A stretch of DNA of 64,000 nucleotides from Gracilinanus agilis (lineage: Eukaryota): the NCBI RefSeq assembly GCF_016433145.1, contig NC_058130.1, positions 646,752,096-646,816,095 on the forward strand. The letters are read 5' to 3'. The translations under genes and the position numbers were made by a program. Of this stretch, positions 10,804 through 63,016 are shown piece by piece. How positions within the stretch are numbered: the first letter of the stretch is position 1; each line of letters opens with the position of its first letter. The notes beneath the pieces were generated by a model. The model made no database searches and had not been told where the DNA came from. It saw nothing but the letters and a program-made list of their open reading frames with translations.

Positions 10804-11384
10804 TTCCCAAGAGAATTTCAGTATTGAGTGAGACATTTGGTTCATTGGGCCTAGCACTATAATATAACGGCAATGATGGAAGGTTGGTATTTAATGTCAT
10901 TCTCAAAAGTTAGGCATATATCCCAAAATAATCCAGTTTGCCTTATTAACTGATTATGGATATGCCTATAATTCATGAATTTATATATATATATACATCA
11001 TCTTTTACTAAAATGTAATTTAATTTTATCATTTTAATCTCCCATTTTTCCTAATTTAATAATTTTAATCACCTATCATTTAATAAATTAAATTAGAATT
11101 TTATTTAAAGAAGATTCTTCTTTCTTTTAAGTGAACAATCCCATAAAATCCAAACTGCAAAACATATACCCAAATAAAAAGTGATAAATTGTATGTTTTC
11201 ATCTACATTCCTACTCCAAAAATTATTTCTCTGGAAGTGGAGAGGATTATTTTTTGGAAGTCCCTCAGAATTGTCCTGGATCATTGTATTACTGTTAGTA
11301 GCGAAATCTATCACATATGTAAATCATCTTTGAATCAAAAATCAGGTTTTTTTTTATTTTATAGAACTGAGTCTATAAGATTAG

Positions 11385-30379: not shown

Positions 30380-31501
30380 NNNNNNNNNNNNNNNNNNNNN
30401 NNNNNNNNNNNNNNNNNNNNNNNNNNNNNNNNNNNNNNNNNNNNNNNNNNNNNNNNNNNNNNNNNNNNNNNNNNNNNNNNNNNNNNNNNNNNNNNNNNNN
30501 NNNNNNNNNNNNNNNNNNNNNNNNNNNNNNNNNNNNNNNNNNNNNNNNNNNNNNNNNNNNNNNNNNNNNNNNNNNNNNNNNNNNNNNNNNNNNNNNNNNN
30601 NNNNNNNNNNNNNNNNNNNNNNNNNNNNNNNNNNNNNNNNNNNNNNNNNNNNNNNNNNNNNNNNNNNNNNNNNNNNNNNNNNNAAATTACTTTTAAAAAG
30701 AGATAGTTGCATAGACCCCACTTCATTAGACCCCGGGTTCGATGAAAAACAAATCCCAGTCTAACTAAGCTTTTAACCATTCTCCAATTTATTCTGTCCT
30801 CTCCTGCCTCCATGCATTTGTACTGGGTGCCTCCAATGATTAAAATGTGAGCTTTCCCTTCTGGGTTAAGATGGCAGCAGAGTAGAAGCAGCTTGCTTAA
30901 CCTCTCCTAACCCACACATACAGTACTCCTCAAGAAGACACAAAAACAAATCCAGATGAATGAAGGGTTCCCACAACAGGGAGCAGCATTGAATGTACTC
31001 GGGATCGGGGCATTTCCAAGCTATGAAGGGGTGAAACAGCTCCCACTAAAATGCGAGCTGAGCAACCCACTCCCACACACACCACCTACAGTGCCAAAGC
31101 CAGCACAAAAGACTTAGAGCAAGTTTGGGGCATCCATTAAGTCATTGGCAGCTATCTGGGGTCACCAGGGCCTCCTCCTGAGAGCAGCAAGACTTAAGAC
31201 CCCAAGAGGCTAAAGAACACATGGACTTTGAACACAGACCCTGAGTGCAGGCTCAGTTGTAGCTGAAGACATGGATCCTGAGCATAGGAGCGGACCTTGA
31301 GTGGGGACCCAGTGCAGAGGGGGGCAAGACTGTGGAAGCAGAGCCCCGAGACTGTTAAAGGAGCTTCAGGCAGAGAAAAAAGCAAGGGGACCACCAGGAG
31401 GCTTGACCCTGAGAACAACTAGACCTGAGACCTCAGGAGCCTAAAGAGTGCAGACAGACCCTGGGTGTGAGGATAAAGCTAAGAGGGCACTGGGCTAAAA
31501 A

Positions 31502-32953
31502 ATGGCAAGCCAGAGACAAGAACCACAGAAGAGAAAGATCAAGAAGAAATCCTTAACACTCGACAACTTTTACACAGAAAAAATCCAGACAACAGAGCAA
31601 ACAGCAGAGGAGAACAAACAAGTAATCATATCAAAACCTTCCCCCCCAAAGATGAAAACTGGTCACAAGCTATTGTAGAGTTCAAATCTGAGATTATGAG
31701 AAAGATGGTAGTGAACTGGCAACAAAATAACAGTTTAAAAGGCAGAATTTCGCAATTAGAAAGTGAGGCTCAGAAATCAAATGAATTGATGAGCAAATTG
31801 AAGACCAGAAATGACCATCTGGAAGCCTTGAAGAACCAACAGACCAGATTCAAAAGGAAAACCAAAAGATTATAGCCGAAAACCAGTCTCTAAAACAGGG
31901 GTCAGCAACGATGACTCTCTAGCCATATCTGGCTCTTTTGAGGGCCAGATATGGCTCTTTCTGCAGGAGCCATAAAGTCATTTTTTTCAAGTGCTGTTAT
32001 AGGAGCTCCCACTGTTATAGGAGTGTGTACTGTGAGCACTGTATAGCTCTCACGAAATTACATTTTAAAAAATGTGGTGTTTATGGCTCTCATGGCCAAA
32101 AAGGTTGCCAACCCCTGCTCTAAAGGCTAGAATTGGGCAATTTGAAAAAAAATGCCCCCAAATCAAAAGAATTAATAAGCAAATTGGAGACCAAAATCAA
32201 GCAGCTAGAATACAGGATAGACCAAATCGAAAAGGAAAATCAAAAAATATAGCAGAAAACCAGTCTCGAAAGACAAGAATTGGGCAAGTAGAAGCCAATA
32301 ATCTCTCAAGACAACAAGAACAATTAAAGTAAAGTCAAAAGACTGATAAAATAGAAGGTAACATGAAATATCTCACTGAGAAATTGACAGATCAAGAAAA
32401 CAGGTCTAGAAGAGACAGTTTGAGAATTATTGGTCTTCCTGAAAAAGCAGAAATTAATAGAAATTTGGACTCCATATTAAAGGAAATTATTCAGCAAAAT
32501 TGCCCTGAAGTTCTACAAGAGGACAATATAGACATTGAAAGGATCCATAGATCACCCTCTATACTTAACCCTGAAAAGACAACCCCCAGGAATATGAGCC
32601 AAATTCAAGAGCTTCCAAGTAAAAGAAAAAAATTTTACAAGAAGCCAGAAAGAGACAATTCAGATATCAAGGAGCACCAATCAGGATCACACAGGATCTG
32701 GCAGCCTCCACACTACAAGAGTGTAGGCTTGGAATATGATATTCAGAAAGGCAAGGCTTGGAATATGATATTCAGAAAGGCAAGAAAACTGGGTCTACAA
32801 CCAAGGATCACCTACCCATCAAAACTGACTATATACTTCCAGGGGAAAGTATGGGCATTCAACAAGATAGAAAATTTCCAAGTATTTGCACAGAAGAGAC
32901 CAGGACTAAATGGAAAGTTCAATATCCAACCACAAAAACCAAGAGAAACATGA
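31502..32953 (+). pseudogene. L1 ORF1p remnant (coiled coil, RRM, CTD), disrupted
   Basis: ATG at 31502 (MASQRQEPQKRK...). Track ORF 32363-32953 has ORF1p motifs LTDQENRSRRDSLRIIGLPE, IERIHRS and PRITYPSKL. Broken by frameshifts, a MITE insertion and a 29-bp duplication. Confidence 0.92.
31896..32117. mobile_element. hAT/Charlie-type MITE (222 bp) inserted in L1 ORF1
   Basis: Termini caggggtcagcaac ... gttgccaacccctg (imperfect TIR). 8-bp TSD ctctaaaa (31888-31895) / ctctaaag (32118-32125). L1 sequence is continuous once it is removed. Confidence 0.92.
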
Positions 32954-33664
32954 AAATGTAAATAAAAAAACAGAGGGGAAAGAAAGAAAACTCATAATTT
33001 TTAAATTTGCCTCTTTAAGGGCTTCAATAAGATCTAATTATTTGTATTCCTATATGGAGAAATGTTATGTGTAATTCTCTGTAGTGAACTCTATTCACTA
33101 TTATAGTATCCACTATTATAGTAATTAGAAGAATTATTCACAAGGAGAGGTTGGAGTACTAAATGGTCTAAGATGATAAGGGGGTGGGTGGGAAAGGGGG
33201 GGTGAATAATAGAGAACACCAAGAGAAACTTGAATGAATAAGAAAAATAGGATTCTATTACACACAAAGAGGACATGGGAAGGGGAGGGGATGAATACTA
33301 TGATAAGAAGGAGAAGAAGAGAGCATTAAGAAGTAATATGCAAACCTTACTCTCAGTGGAATTAACCCTGAGAGGGAAGAGTAGCTATATCCATTGAGAT
33401 ATAGAACTCTATCTAACCCTACTGAGAAAGTCAGAAGGGATAAACCAAGGGGAGCAGAAGAGTGGGGAGGTCAAAAAAGGGAGGGGAGGAGAAGGGAGAG
33501 GAAATTCATTAGGCCTTAAAAATAAAAGGAGGGGAACAACAAGGGAGGGAGTAGAATGGGTAGTAAATCAAGGGAGGGGACAAGGGTTACTGGTTTAAAA
33601 CAAATCACTGGTTTAAAAGGAAATAGCCTAAGAAGAAGGGGTAGAACTAAGAGAGGATACCAAA

Positions 33665-34501
33665 ATGTTGGGGAATGCACAACTGATAATTGTAACTCTG
33701 AAAGTGAACGGGATGATTGATTATACTAAATTAAAAAGCTTTTGTACAAACAAAAACAATGCAACCAAAATCAGAAGTGAAACAACAACTTGGGAAAAAA
33801 TCTTTATAACAAAAAACTCTGACAGGGGTCTAATTACTCTAATATACAAGGAGTTAAATCAATTGTATAAAATATCAAGCCATTCCCCAATCAATAAATG
33901 GGCAAGGGACATGAATAGGCAATCTTCAGATAAAGAAATCAAAACTATCAATAAGCACATGAGAAAGTGCTCTAAACCTCTAATAATTAGAGAAATGCAA
34001 ATCAAAACAACGCTGAGGTATCACCTCACACCTAGCAGATTGGCTAAAATGATAGAAGAGGAGAATAATGAATGTTGGAGGAGATGTGGCCAAATTGGGA
34101 CATTAATGCATTGCTGGTGGAGTTGTGAACTGATCCAACCATTCTGGCTGGCAATTTGGAACTACACTCAAAGGGCTATAAAAGATTGCCTGCCCTTTGA
34201 TCCAGTCATACCATTGTTGGGTCTGTACCCCAAAGAGATCATAGATAAACAGACTTGTACGAAAATATTTATAGCCTCGATTTTTGTGGTGGCAAAAAAC
34301 TGGAAAATGTGGGTATGCCCTTCTATTGGGGAATGGCTGAACAAACTGTGGTATATGCTGGTGATGGAATATTATTGCGCTAAAAGGAATATTAAAATGG
34401 AGGAATTCCATGTGAACTGCAAAGACCTTCAGGAATTGATGCAGAGTGAAAGGAGCAGAGCCAAAAGAACATTGTACATAGAGACGGATACACTGTGGTA
34501 A
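33665..34501 (+). CDS. In-frame fusion of the first ~17 aa of L1 ORF2p to its C-terminal ~260 aa; endonuclease and RT domains absent
   Basis: MLGNAQLIIVTLKVNGM resembles the ORF2p N-terminus (human MTGSNSHITILTLNINGL). It runs straight into IDYTKLKSFCT...WEKIF and the CCHC knuckle CWRRCGQIGTLMHCWWSC. 278 codons without a stop. Identity is secure; expression or function is not shown. Confidence 0.75.
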   Translation: MLGNAQLIIVTLKVNGMIDYTKLKSFCTNKNNATKIRSETTTWEKIFITKNSDRGLITLIYKELNQLYKISSHSPINKWARDMNRQSSDKEIKTINKHMRKCSKPLIIREMQIKTTLRYHLTPSRLAKMIEEENNECWRRCGQIGTLMHCWWSCELIQPFWLAIWNYTQRAIKDCLPFDPVIPLLGLYPKEIIDKQTCTKIFIASIFVVAKNWKMWVCPSIGEWLNKLWYMLVMEYYCAKRNIKMEEFHVNCKDLQELMQSERSRAKRTLYIETDTLW

Positions 34502-36149
34502 AATAGAATGTAATGGACTTCTGTACTAGCAGCAGTGCAATGACCCAGGACAATTCTGAGGGATTTATGGTAAAGAACGCTACCCACATTCAGAGGAAGA
34601 ACTACAGGAGAGGAAATACAGAGGAAAAGCAATTGCTTTAACACATGGGTTGAGGCGGACATGATTGGGGATGTAGACTCGAAACTACCACACCAATGCA
34701 ACTATCAACAATTTGGAAATAAGTCTTGATCGATGACACATGTTAAAACCAGGGGAAATGTACATCGGCTATGGGGGGGGGAGGTCAGGGGGTGAAGGGG
34801 AAAGAAAGAACATGAATCATGTAACCATGATAACTTTTATAAAAAATAAAAATTATTAAAAATAAGTGGGCTTTCCACATTTGTAAAAATCACCACCCTT
34901 CTATGAGATGGAATCAAGTGCCTTGATTTCTGCAGCAAGAAAAGATTCTGCCCCTCTGCAGTTTTGTATTCTCCTACTTAATATCCTCATATTTGTCACA
35001 CTAACTTTCATTATAGTTATTTGTGTTCAGGTTTTATTCCTCTTTCAGTAAACTCCTTGTTGGAAGGGAGTATATTATTTTTCATCTTTGTACTTCAGTA
35101 CCTATTAGAGTATATTGTTCATGTTATAGTGGCTCTGTAATTTCGTCAGTGTCAGCACTTCTTTCACTAATTTAGGTCACTACTCCTCCCTGCCCTCTCA
35201 ATGCAGAGCAATTTATGTTCCTGGTTCTCTAAAAATCCCCCTTAGAGGGACTACCCAAATATTTTCACAATTTGAGAAGCAAGGGAGTTAATCTCTGAGG
35301 ATAGGAAAGCTGGGGCTACAGCTGGTAGCCCTAATGAGCTACTGAGCAAGGTCAACCTTCCTCTTATTATAAGACTTATTTTATAGCTTATAAAAGCAGG
35401 AATAGCCAGTCTCTGAGATCAAGTTTCATGCTGACCCATTTCACTGTAATTGTAATATGTTGGCTGAGCATTAGAGTCAGGTGAGATCTCTTTGAAGCAG
35501 AGTAGCAGATCATTGTATTTTTTCCCATGAGGTTTTTCCTTTATGCATTAGTTAAGGTTCTTTTGGACTGTGAGAATGCTTATAGGAAGTCATAATTTCC
35601 AGGCTCTGCTGCAAGCCTACTGAAGTCTTGGTCAAAATATACTTGTGGTTTAGAAAATCTTTGACAGCTATATCCTTAAGATCTGAGACCTTCCCTATTT
35701 TCTTCAGAATACCTATATCAGAAGTTGTAGAACCTTGATACCAAAGTATTGGAGGTCATTGTCTTTTTTTCTTTTCTTTTTCATATTTTTGTAAAATATT
35801 ACAGAGATAACAACATTCCACATTGGTTGTCCATCTGCTATTCTTCTAATTTCATGATCAGCACACATGCTTAAAATATTTAAGATACTATCTCTTCCAG
35901 GATTTCTTACATGTAAGTCATGAGTGATAGCATGTATTATATGCCCACCATATATCTTTCATATGACTTTTAGGTAATTTGTAATACTAATCTTTCAGAA
36001 ATTATATTGCTTCCTGATATATAACAATATATCTTTGGACGAATATTTTTATTGAAGAGGAAAAAATAAGCAGTTTGCAATTATTAAAAGAATTACTCCA
36101 AGGACCTCAAATATAAAATAAAGTATCTTCAATTCATCAATTGATTTTA

Positions 36150-62419: not shown

Positions 62420-63016
62420 GAGGCACAGGAATAAAATGAATGAAGCCTACTTTTAAAAGCTGTACATATTCAAATCTACTGGATTTGATGACCTGTATCC
62501 TTAGGAACATGGTGCCTGATATTGCAGAGCCACAATTTAATTTTTTGAGAACTCATGGAGGACAAAAAAGTCACTGATTATTGGAAAAGGACGAATGTAG
62601 TGTCCATCTTAAAAAAAAGTAAAAAAGACGACCCTGGTAATTATAGACAAGTCAGCTTAACTTCGATACCAGGCAAGATACCACAACAAATCATCAAACA
62701 ATCAATTTGCAATCATCTAGAAGAGCGGAAGGTACTGGGTTGCAACCAACATGGCTTTGTGAAGAACAAATTGTGCCAGACCAATTTAATTTCCTTCTAT
62801 GATAGAGTGACAGGCCATGTAGATAAAGGGGAAGCAATAGATGTAATCTTTGTGGACTTCAGTAAGGCTTTTGATTCTTCCCCACATGGCATTCTCATCA
62901 ACAAACCAGGAAGATATGGTCTAGACCCAATGACCATTAGGTGGGTACAGAGCTGGATGAAGATTCATGCCCCAAAGTTGGCTGTAAAGTTACTTGCTAT
63001 CCATCACCCCGGATGA
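62420..63016 (+). mobile_element. CR1/L3-clade LINE fragment, reverse transcriptase region, with an open 153-codon frame (62555-63016)
   Basis: Translation has CR1 RT motifs W-R-NV, DPGNYR-VSLTSIPGKI, QHGFVKNK-CQTNLISFYDRVT, DFSKAFD and TIRWV. The upstream ~130 bp is homologous but has deletions. Confidence 0.93.

What the first reader, a model, noticed from the sequence alone, without database searches (positions are those of the whole stretch)
30858..34860. 5'-complete L1 with an in-frame ~1000-codon ORF2 deletion: candidate non-autonomous (HAL1-like) family
Seen: 5'UTR, ORF1, spacer, 3'UTR, tail and a degenerate TSD are all present, yet the element is only ~3.77 kb without the nested MITE. 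At ~33716 (gggatga|ttgattatac) ORF2 jumps from codon 17 of the endonuclease to the C-terminal segment. The fused 278-codon frame, including the CCHC knuckle, has no stop or frameshift, while ORF1 has several lesions. Known: full ORF2p is ~1270 aa, and 'half-L1' (HAL1) families arose repeatedly by ORF2 loss, including in marsupials. Inference: this may be a copy of an amplified non-autonomous L1 whose source element made ORF1p plus an EN/RT-less mini-ORF2p. It could instead be a one-off deletion.
Basis: partly seen in the sequence, partly recalled or inferred. Interest (0 to 1): 0.72.

Follow-up and report, generated by a model that had tools for sequence, protein, structure and literature searches.

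The report
Internally deleted opossum-type L1 copy
This is one decayed L1 jumping-gene copy in an opossum-type genome that has lost about 3 kb (endonuclease and reverse transcriptase) from its second gene; I could not test whether it belongs to an amplified "half-L1" family, and what I could test makes it look ordinary.

Summary
A TSD-flanked L1 at 30858-34850 has a leader, a broken ORF1, a 711-nt spacer, a 3'UTR and a short A-rich end. Its ORF2 runs from codon 17 of the endonuclease straight into the last ~260 codons. The fused 278-codon frame (33665-34501) is open, and residues 19-269 align to human ORF2p 1012-1264 (E 5e-83).

The interpretation, an amplified HAL1-like family, could not be tested:
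- No tool here reaches this species' assembly.
- The indirect searches found no second junction, but they have almost no power.

Three things I could establish:
- The junction is not a canonical splice site.
- ORF1 has 8 frameshifts, 1 stop and a nested hAT-like MITE, while the ORF2 remnant has no lesions (p about 0.01). CpG retention differs the same way (p 0.02). This is the opposite of a HAL1 pattern, where ORF1 is the conserved part.
- The asymmetry could be chance, a two-template chimera, or a source element whose ORF1 was already dead.

Unchecked notes from this scan list other 5'-intact, ORF2-less L1s of other sizes on other DNA of this genome.

My odds: one-off deletion about 0.5, shared-junction family about 0.3, chimera about 0.15. 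Interest is low to moderate.

The parts
30835..30857 (+). Left target-site duplication (long reading, 23 bp; the core GTGRGCTTTCC is its last 11 bp)
   Evidence: Local alignment with 34851-34876: 21 matches, 2 mismatches, 2 indels. The score is reached by 3 of 2000 shuffles.
30858..31501 (+). L1 leader (5'UTR), 644 nt; GC 0.52, CpG o/e 0.12. Completeness at the 5' end is not shown.
   Evidence: It lies between the TSD and the ORF1 start. No reference leader was available.
31502..32953 (+). ORF1, broken. Frameshifts lie near 31645, 31838, 32152, 32250, 32595, 32631 and 32725, plus the 29-bp duplication. There is one stop at 32330-32332. The coiled coil is enlarged by an old internal repeat.
   Evidence: Pfam PF02994 and PF17490; tblastn of Monodelphis ORF1p P0149, P0152 and P0160; three-frame reading; pieces joined with X; internal repeat 31738-31894 against 32122-32271 at 72%.
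31896..32117 (.). Nested hAT-like MITE, 222 bp, with an 8-bp TSD (31888-31895 and 32118-32125)
   Evidence: Terminal inverted repeats match 12/14 and the TSD matches 7/8. The 230 nt it adds account for the frame change across it.
32726..32783 (+). Perfect 29-bp tandem duplication inside ORF1 (shifts the frame)
   Evidence: Tandem Repeats Finder: period 29, 2.1 copies, 100% matches; exact unit found at 32726 and 32755.
32954..33664 (+). Inter-ORF spacer, 711 nt, purine- and G-rich, with no CpG
   Evidence: Long spacers are reported for marsupial L1 (509 nt in L1-1_SH, PMC4408412).
33665..33716 (+). ORF2 start codon and the first 17 codons of the endonuclease. The position equivalent to the catalytic Asn14 is Lys here.
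   Evidence: Identity as the EN start rests on my knowledge of the human and mouse ORF2p N-termini; a 20-aa query gave no PDB hit.
33717..34501 (+). Last ~261 codons of ORF2: the end of the RT region plus the whole C-terminal domain with CCHC. It is in frame with the stub and open.
   Evidence: Aligns to human ORF2p 1012-1264, E 4.6e-83. Best didelphid fragments are 76-82% identical. Domain limits come from PMC13103738.
34502..34850 (+). 3'UTR and short A-rich end (34839-34850). If the TSD is only the 11-bp core, the decayed tail runs to 34865.
   Evidence: A 121-nt stretch of this UTR matches 11196-11316 (-) at 71%.
34851..34876 (+). Right target-site duplication (26 bp in the long reading)

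Best explanation
This is a single, dead copy of a didelphid-type L1 retrotransposon, inserted once by target-primed reverse transcription (one TSD pair, A-rich 3' end). It lacks about 2.98 kb of ORF2, from codon 18 to about codon 1011 in human numbering.

I think the deletion most likely belongs to this copy alone. It was made either when the reverse transcriptase skipped along its template during the insertion, or by a later genomic deletion. The junction falls in frame by chance (1 in 3). The 278-codon frame it creates encodes only 17 residues of endonuclease, the end of the RT region and the C-terminal domain. It has no nuclease or polymerase, so the copy could never move by itself.

Shown: the anatomy, the breakpoints, the broken ORF1, the nested MITE, and the absence of a canonical splice junction.

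Inferred: that the junction is unique, and when the deletion happened.
For: - Anatomy and breakpoints.
- One TSD pair around the whole element: 3 of 2000 shuffles.
- Not splicing: all 13 didelphid-type fragments that reach upstream of the D-Y-x-K-L-K motif read Asn/His/Glu then Phe/Leu just before it. The deleted stretch therefore cannot end in AG in any register of the junction (also 17).
- No second junction: none in the window, in 147 database fragments, in JGI metagenome contigs, or as exact ORFs in the 15-billion protein collection.
- The copy is not young: 9 disabling lesions and a MITE in ORF1, an imperfect TSD, and 7 changes at 137 otherwise conserved positions of the ORF2 remnant, a rate in the middle of the range of broken database fragments.
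- Unchecked notes of this scan list other 5'-intact, ORF2-less L1s of 1469, 2096, 2480 and 3144 letters in the same genome. That fits a process making many different deletions rather than one family.
- Internal deletions are a recognised class among recent human and chimpanzee insertions (PMC2912911).
Against: - The uniqueness of the junction was never tested against this species' genome.
- If both halves have the same age and decay neutrally, having all 9 point lesions in the 1222 nt of ORF1 and none in the 837 nt of the ORF2 remnant has p about 0.009.
- CpG retention is 0.10 in the 5' part against 0.26 in the 3' part (p 0.02). This comparison is confounded by the different starting composition of the parts.
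- Homopolymer density is similar in the two ORFs, so slippage-prone sequence does not explain the difference.
- Three small runs of the same species (52-83 million letters) hold 26-29% of the stretch's 31-mers. Some part of the element is therefore close to a high-copy sequence, and I could not see which part.
Confidence: 0.5

Rival explanations
1. Amplified non-autonomous family. A source L1 lost codons 18 to ~1011 of ORF2, stayed transcribed from its own leader, and was copied repeatedly in trans by ORF2p from autonomous L1s. This locus is one decayed copy. In the stronger version the CTD-only mini-ORF2p, or ORF1p, helps the RNA get copied.
For: - The element has a leader, both ORF starts, a 3'UTR and a TSD, so it could have been retrotransposed as a 3.76-kb unit.
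- The fusion is in frame and open, and the open frame is less decayed than ORF1 (p about 0.01).
- HAL1 families arose several times in mammals (PMC5753468, citing Bao and Jurka 2010).
- ORF1-bearing bipartite LINE derivatives are a known class (PMC5786205).
- Other ORF2-less, 5'-intact L1s are noted in this genome (unchecked).
- Separately expressed ORF2p fragments can re-form working contacts (PMC13103738), so a free CTD is not necessarily inert.
Against: - No second copy of the junction was found anywhere I could look, though with little power.
- After insertion every copy decays neutrally, so selection in the source cannot explain why this copy's ORF1 is wrecked and its ORF2 remnant is not. 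That would need a source whose ORF1 was already dead, which is not HAL1-like.
- The other noted elements have different sizes, so they have different junctions.
- The catalytic-Asn position in the retained EN stub is Lys, and 7 conserved positions are changed. There is no sign of special constraint.
Confidence: 0.3
2. Two-template chimera. During one insertion the reverse transcriptase copied the last ~1.13 kb of a younger L1 RNA, then switched to a transcript of an older L1 whose ORF1 was already broken. It landed at ORF2 codon 17 and ran to that transcript's 5' end. The in-frame junction is then chance.
For: This reading predicts an older-looking 5' part and a younger-looking 3' part inside one TSD. 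That matches three observations:
- lesions, 9 against 0, p 0.009;
- CpG o/e, 0.10 against 0.26, p 0.02;
- changes at conserved residues, 11% against 5%, p 0.08.

The 3' part plus the MITE make up 29% of the stretch searched. That is close to the 26-29% of words held by the three small runs, but this may be coincidence. L1 template switching that makes chimeric insertions is described for many RNAs (bioRxiv 10.1101/2025.02.02.635956, abstract).
Against: - Each of the three signals is post hoc, and two are confounded: ORF1 evolves faster than the ORF2 C-terminus, and leaders and ORFs start with different CpG content.
- Post-insertion decay hits both halves equally, and the imperfect TSD suggests that decay is not negligible.
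- No source copy could be looked for.
Confidence: 0.15
3. Assembly artefact: the junction at 33716|33717 is a false join between reads of different L1 copies.
For: The junction could not be checked against reads. There are N runs in the window, one of them 175 nt upstream of the element.
Against: - The two sides share at most a base or two at the junction, so nothing there would mislead an assembler.
- The element is framed by a matching TSD pair.
- The best run holds 60% of the stretch's words.
Confidence: 0.05

Closest known systems
HAL1 ('half-L1') non-autonomous L1 derivatives (Smit 1999; Bao and Jurka 2010, cited in PMC5753468 and PMC5786205)
   Same: It is L1-derived, keeps the leader and ORF1, has no endonuclease or reverse transcriptase, and carries L1-type insertion marks (TSD, A-rich end).
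   Different: HAL1 is defined as a multicopy family that encodes only ORF1p. Here copy number is unknown, ORF1 is the most damaged part, and a 261-codon piece of ORF2 with the whole C-terminal domain is kept in frame with the ORF2 start. I could not compare it with Repbase or Dfam HAL1 or L1 entries for Monodelphis, because no tool here holds them and PMC2923044 is not held.
One-off internally deleted L1 insertions (classed as 'internal deletion' among recent human and chimpanzee insertions, PMC2912911)
   Same: A single TSD pair, both ends of the element present, the middle missing, and no splice signals at the junction.
   Different: Nothing essential differs. The in-frame, still-open fusion and the uneven decay of the two halves are the only unusual points.
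SpIREs, spliced integrated retrotransposed L1 elements (Larson et al. 2018, PMC5860796)
   Same: It is an L1 copy lacking an internal segment, retrotransposed as a shorter unit. A probable spliced L1 was noted elsewhere in this genome (s1-171001, unchecked).
   Different: By that paper's abstract, SpIREs arise from functional splice donor and acceptor sites within L1 RNA. As I recall, the known joins are within the 5'UTR or from the 5'UTR into ORF1. Here the missing piece is inside ORF2 and cannot end in AG.
Chimeric L1 insertions made by template switching (U6/L1 and others; bioRxiv 10.1101/2025.02.02.635956)
   Same: Two parts sit inside one TSD, with a 5'-truncated L1 as the 3' part. This would explain the uneven decay.
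   Different: In the known chimeras the 5' partner is usually a small RNA or an mRNA joined at its 3' end. Here the partner would be another L1 transcript entered at an internal point. The two-source origin is not shown.

Membership tests
L1 (LINE-1) retrotransposon copy | ORF1 with the L1 RRM and C-terminal domains | tested here: met
   PF02994 (E 9e-8) and PF17490 (E 1e-4), both above the curated cut-offs. Collinear with Monodelphis ORF1p at E 1e-80 or better.
L1 (LINE-1) retrotransposon copy | ORF2 with endonuclease, reverse transcriptase and a CCHC C-terminal domain | tested here: not met
   Only 17 N-terminal codons and the stretch equal to human residues 1012-1264 are present. Pfam finds no domain in the 278-aa frame. 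It is an L1 derivative, not a complete L1.
L1 (LINE-1) retrotransposon copy | Insertion marks of target-primed reverse transcription (TSD, A-rich 3' end, A/T-rich target) | tested here: met
   TSD pair 30835-30857 and 34851-34876, or at least its 11-bp core. The A-rich end is directly before the right TSD.
HAL1 (half-L1) family | Many copies that share the same ORF2-less structure and junction (a family with its own reference) | not testable with these tools
The species is absent from the protein collection. The blanks have no power.
HAL1 (half-L1) family | ORF1 is the only coding capacity and is the conserved part | tested here: not met
   This copy's ORF1 has 8 frameshifts, 1 stop and a MITE. 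A 278-codon ORF2-derived frame is present and open. This is one decayed copy, so the result does not exclude an intact ORF1 in a source element.
HAL1 (half-L1) family | No endonuclease or reverse transcriptase | tested here: met
   residues equal to human ~18-1011 are absent.
SpIRE (spliced L1 integrant) | The missing segment is bounded by GT...AG splice signals | tested here: not met
   On the acceptor side, the codons before the junction in all 13 didelphid-type homologues are Asn/His/Glu then Phe/Leu, so no AG is possible in any register (also 17). The donor side could not be read because no full-length didelphid L1 DNA was available.
Template-switch chimeric retrocopy | The two parts come from different source RNAs | tested here: inconclusive
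   Lesions 9 against 0 (p 0.009), CpG o/e 0.10 against 0.26 (p 0.02), changed conserved residues 11% against 5% (p 0.08). These are suggestive but post hoc and partly confounded.

The most novel reading that the evidence does not exclude
The element is one copy of an amplified, trans-mobilised L1 derivative in a didelphid. Its source had lost endonuclease and reverse transcriptase but kept, under selection, a CTD-only 'mini-ORF2p' made from the normal ORF2 start. ORF1 was dispensable. The free C-terminal domain would bind the element's own RNA or the ORF2p of autonomous L1s, and so hijack or modulate them. That would be a non-autonomous LINE living on the opposite half of the coding capacity from HAL1.
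Probability: 0.08. Interest if true: 0.7.

Novelty: new member of a known kind. Interest (0 to 1): 0.3.

Why it matters
If the junction is unique, this is one more internally deleted L1 fossil with no wider consequence.

If the junction is shared by many loci, it would be a non-autonomous L1 lineage that keeps the ORF2 C-terminal domain instead of, or as well as, ORF1. That would bear on two open questions: what the ORF2p C-terminal domain does on its own, and how L1 RNAs without their own enzyme get copied despite cis preference.

The uneven decay of the two halves is a small unsolved point. If real, it shows L1-to-L1 template switching, or a long-lived source with a dead ORF1.

Tried and rejected

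- Reads test of the junction. The look-up of sequencing runs gave only Logan-contig runs: X1 holds 0.60 of the words, X2-X4 hold 0.26-0.29, and other species hold about 0.10.
Queries used 33665-33973 or shorter. Local scripts masked those codons with X for alignments and otherwise only counted bases.

**Searches that came back blank**
- The junction pattern in JGI metagenome contigs gave 0 hits.
- An exact look-up of 10 ORFs of the element, including the 54-aa ORF that ends on the junction, found none in the collection.
- Earlier findings searched by sequence were blank. Per the operators, that means nothing.
- The Bao and Jurka 2010 HAL1 paper (PMC2923044) is not held.
- A PDB search with the 20 N-terminal residues gave no hit, and no fetched protein contains an EN N-terminus.

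**Readings considered and rejected**
- Splicing: no AG is possible at the acceptor side.
- A young 5'-truncated L1 nested in an older L1: the sequence after the 3' end repeats the flank upstream of the leader, not endonuclease sequence.
- Slippage-prone sequence as the cause of the lesion asymmetry: the two ORFs have similar homopolymer density.

**Not run**
- The big representative-protein search and structure prediction.


Full report
**What is there**

The sequence at 30858-34850 is an L1 retrotransposon copy on the + strand. In order it contains:
- a 644-nt leader;
- ORF1, 31502-32953;
- a 711-nt purine-rich spacer;
- an open 278-codon frame, 33665-34501;
- a 3'UTR and a short A-rich end.

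ORF1 carries the two L1 ORF1 Pfam domains, PF02994 and PF17490, both above their cut-offs. It is collinear with Monodelphis domestica ORF1p at E about 1e-80.

Residues 19-269 of the 278-aa frame align without frameshift to residues 1012-1264 of human L1 ORF2p (PDB 8sxt, 8uw3, 9k6g; E 4.6e-83), with the CCHC knuckle intact. The first 17 residues have the hydrophobic-T-L-x-V-N-G pattern of the start of the L1 endonuclease. I know that pattern from the human and mouse proteins; a query this short cannot score in a search.

By the domain limits in PMC13103738 (EN 1-239, Cryptic 240-380, Z 381-440, RT 505-1067, CTD 1068-1275), the frame keeps a 17-residue stub of EN, the last ~56 residues of the RT region and the whole CTD. 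About 994 codons are gone.

Database L1 fragments of didelphid type read Asn/His/Glu then Phe/Leu just before the D-Y-x-K-L-K motif. Here the codon before it is a new Ile codon, built from one base of the EN side and two bases of that Phe/Leu codon.

**Boundaries**

The flanks repeat each other: 30835-30857 against 34851-34876, with 21 matches, 2 mismatches and 2 indels. Only 3 of 2000 shuffles reach that score. One insertion event therefore frames the whole structure.

This rules out a young truncated L1 nested in an older one. In that case the sequence after the 3' end would repeat endonuclease sequence, not the flank upstream of the leader.

Without the nested MITE and its TSD the element is 3763 nt. 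Whether the leader is complete at its 5' end could not be checked, because I had no didelphid L1 leader to compare.

**State of ORF1**

I followed the true frame against Monodelphis ORF1p and against the element's own internal coiled-coil repeat. ORF1 has:
- frameshifts near 31645, 31838, 32152, 32250, 32595, 32631 and 32725;
- a perfect 29-bp tandem duplication at 32726-32783, which also shifts the frame;
- one stop at 32330;
- a 222-bp hAT-like MITE at 31896-32117 with an 8-bp TSD.

That is why Pfam matches only its two ends.

**Is it a family?**

This is the claim that gave the finding its interest, and I could not test it.
- The runs that hold the stretch are all kept as Logan contigs.

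The indirect searches were blank:
- no other copy of this L1 in the window;
- no protein with the junction among 147 fetched L1 C-terminal fragments, 26 of which reach upstream of the motif and show the full-length context;
- no hit to the junction pattern in JGI metagenome contigs;
- none of 10 ORFs of the element in the protein collection.

The best protein hits are only 76-82% identical and come from Monodelphis domestica or unnamed ENA contigs. This species is evidently not in those collections, so the blanks say very little.

**What could be learned**

1. The deletion is not a canonical splice. With Asn/His/Glu then Phe/Leu codons before the junction, the missing stretch cannot end in AG in any register.

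2. The copy is not fresh. The TSD is imperfect. Seven of 137 positions at which at least 85% of related fragments agree are changed in the ORF2 remnant. That rate, 5%, sits in the middle of the range of broken database fragments.

3. Decay is uneven.
   - All 9 point lesions lie in the 1222 nt of ORF1 and none in the 837 nt of the ORF2 remnant (p 0.009; 0.015-0.026 if neighbouring lesions are merged).
   - The two ORFs have similar homopolymer density.
   - CpG observed/expected is 0.10 in the 5' part and 0.26 in the 3' part (p 0.02).
   - Changes at conserved residues run 11% in ORF1 against 5% in the remnant (p 0.08).
   - The last two comparisons are confounded by the different nature of the parts, and all three are post hoc.

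**What the asymmetry means**

Selection in a source element cannot protect an inserted copy. A HAL1-like family living on ORF1p therefore predicts equal decay, or better-kept ORF1 sequences across copies. It does not predict what is seen here.

Three readings remain:
- chance;
- a source whose ORF1 was already dead while its ORF2 remnant was not;
- a chimera, in which the reverse transcriptase copied the end of a younger L1 RNA and then switched to an older L1 transcript.

The share of 31-mers held by three small runs of the same species is 0.26-0.29. That equals the fraction of the stretch made up by the 3' part plus the MITE. It is equally what a uniform ~3% divergence from a high-copy reference would give. 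I leave it unexplained.

**Context from this scan**

Unchecked first-reader notes on other DNA of the same genome describe 5'-intact L1 derivatives lacking ORF2, of 1469, 2096, 2480 and 3144 letters. A follow-up describes a probable spliced L1.

Such elements therefore seem common in this genome and have different junctions. That fits many independent deletions at least as well as one family. I did not see their sequences.

**Verdict**

My odds:
- one-off deletion, at reverse transcription or later: about 0.5;
- family sharing the junction: about 0.3;
- two-template chimera: about 0.15;
- assembly artefact: about 0.05.

As it stands this is a new instance of a known kind of L1 fossil. A single BLASTN of the junction against the species' assembly would settle the question.

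Noticed in passing
window 31738-31894 and 32122-32271: ORF1 holds two copies of a ~52-codon coiled-coil unit, 72% identical at DNA level. The read-through ORF1 is therefore about 400 codons, against 321-327 in the Monodelphis ORF1p that were fetched. The duplication is much older than the copy, so this L1 lineage seems to have an enlarged coiled coil.
   Followed up: partly
window 31896-32117: A 222-bp MITE with CAGGGG... terminal inverted repeats (12/14) and an 8-bp TSD (hAT-like) is inserted in ORF1. Its family was not identified.
   Followed up: partly
window 32726-32783: A perfect 29-bp tandem duplication (100% identity) sits inside an otherwise decayed ORF1. It is either recent or lucky.
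   Followed up: no
window 32954-33664: The inter-ORF spacer is 711 nt, rich in GGGAGGG-type purine runs, and has no CpG at all. G-rich tracts of this kind are known in eutherian L1 3'UTRs; here they lie between the ORFs.
   Followed up: no
window 33701-33703: In the retained 17-codon endonuclease stub, the position equivalent to the catalytic Asn14 of human L1 EN is Lys. This rests on my memory of the human sequence.
   Followed up: no
(runs X2-X4): Three small runs (52-83 million letters) of the same species and study hold 26-29% of the 31-mers of 30684-35300. Part of the element is near-identical to something abundant, or expressed, in that species. I could not see which part.
   Followed up: no
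window 30684-30760: Just upstream of the element, after a 304-N run, there is a GGTTCGA B-box-like motif. It may be the end of a tRNA-derived SINE.
   Followed up: no
window 62555-63016: A 153-aa open frame with reverse-transcriptase-like motifs. Another first-stage note (s1-154082) already flags it as a CR1 RT frame.
   Followed up: no
window 11196-11316 (-): The only other stretch of the window similar to this L1 is 121 nt at 71% identity to its 3'UTR.
   Followed up: no
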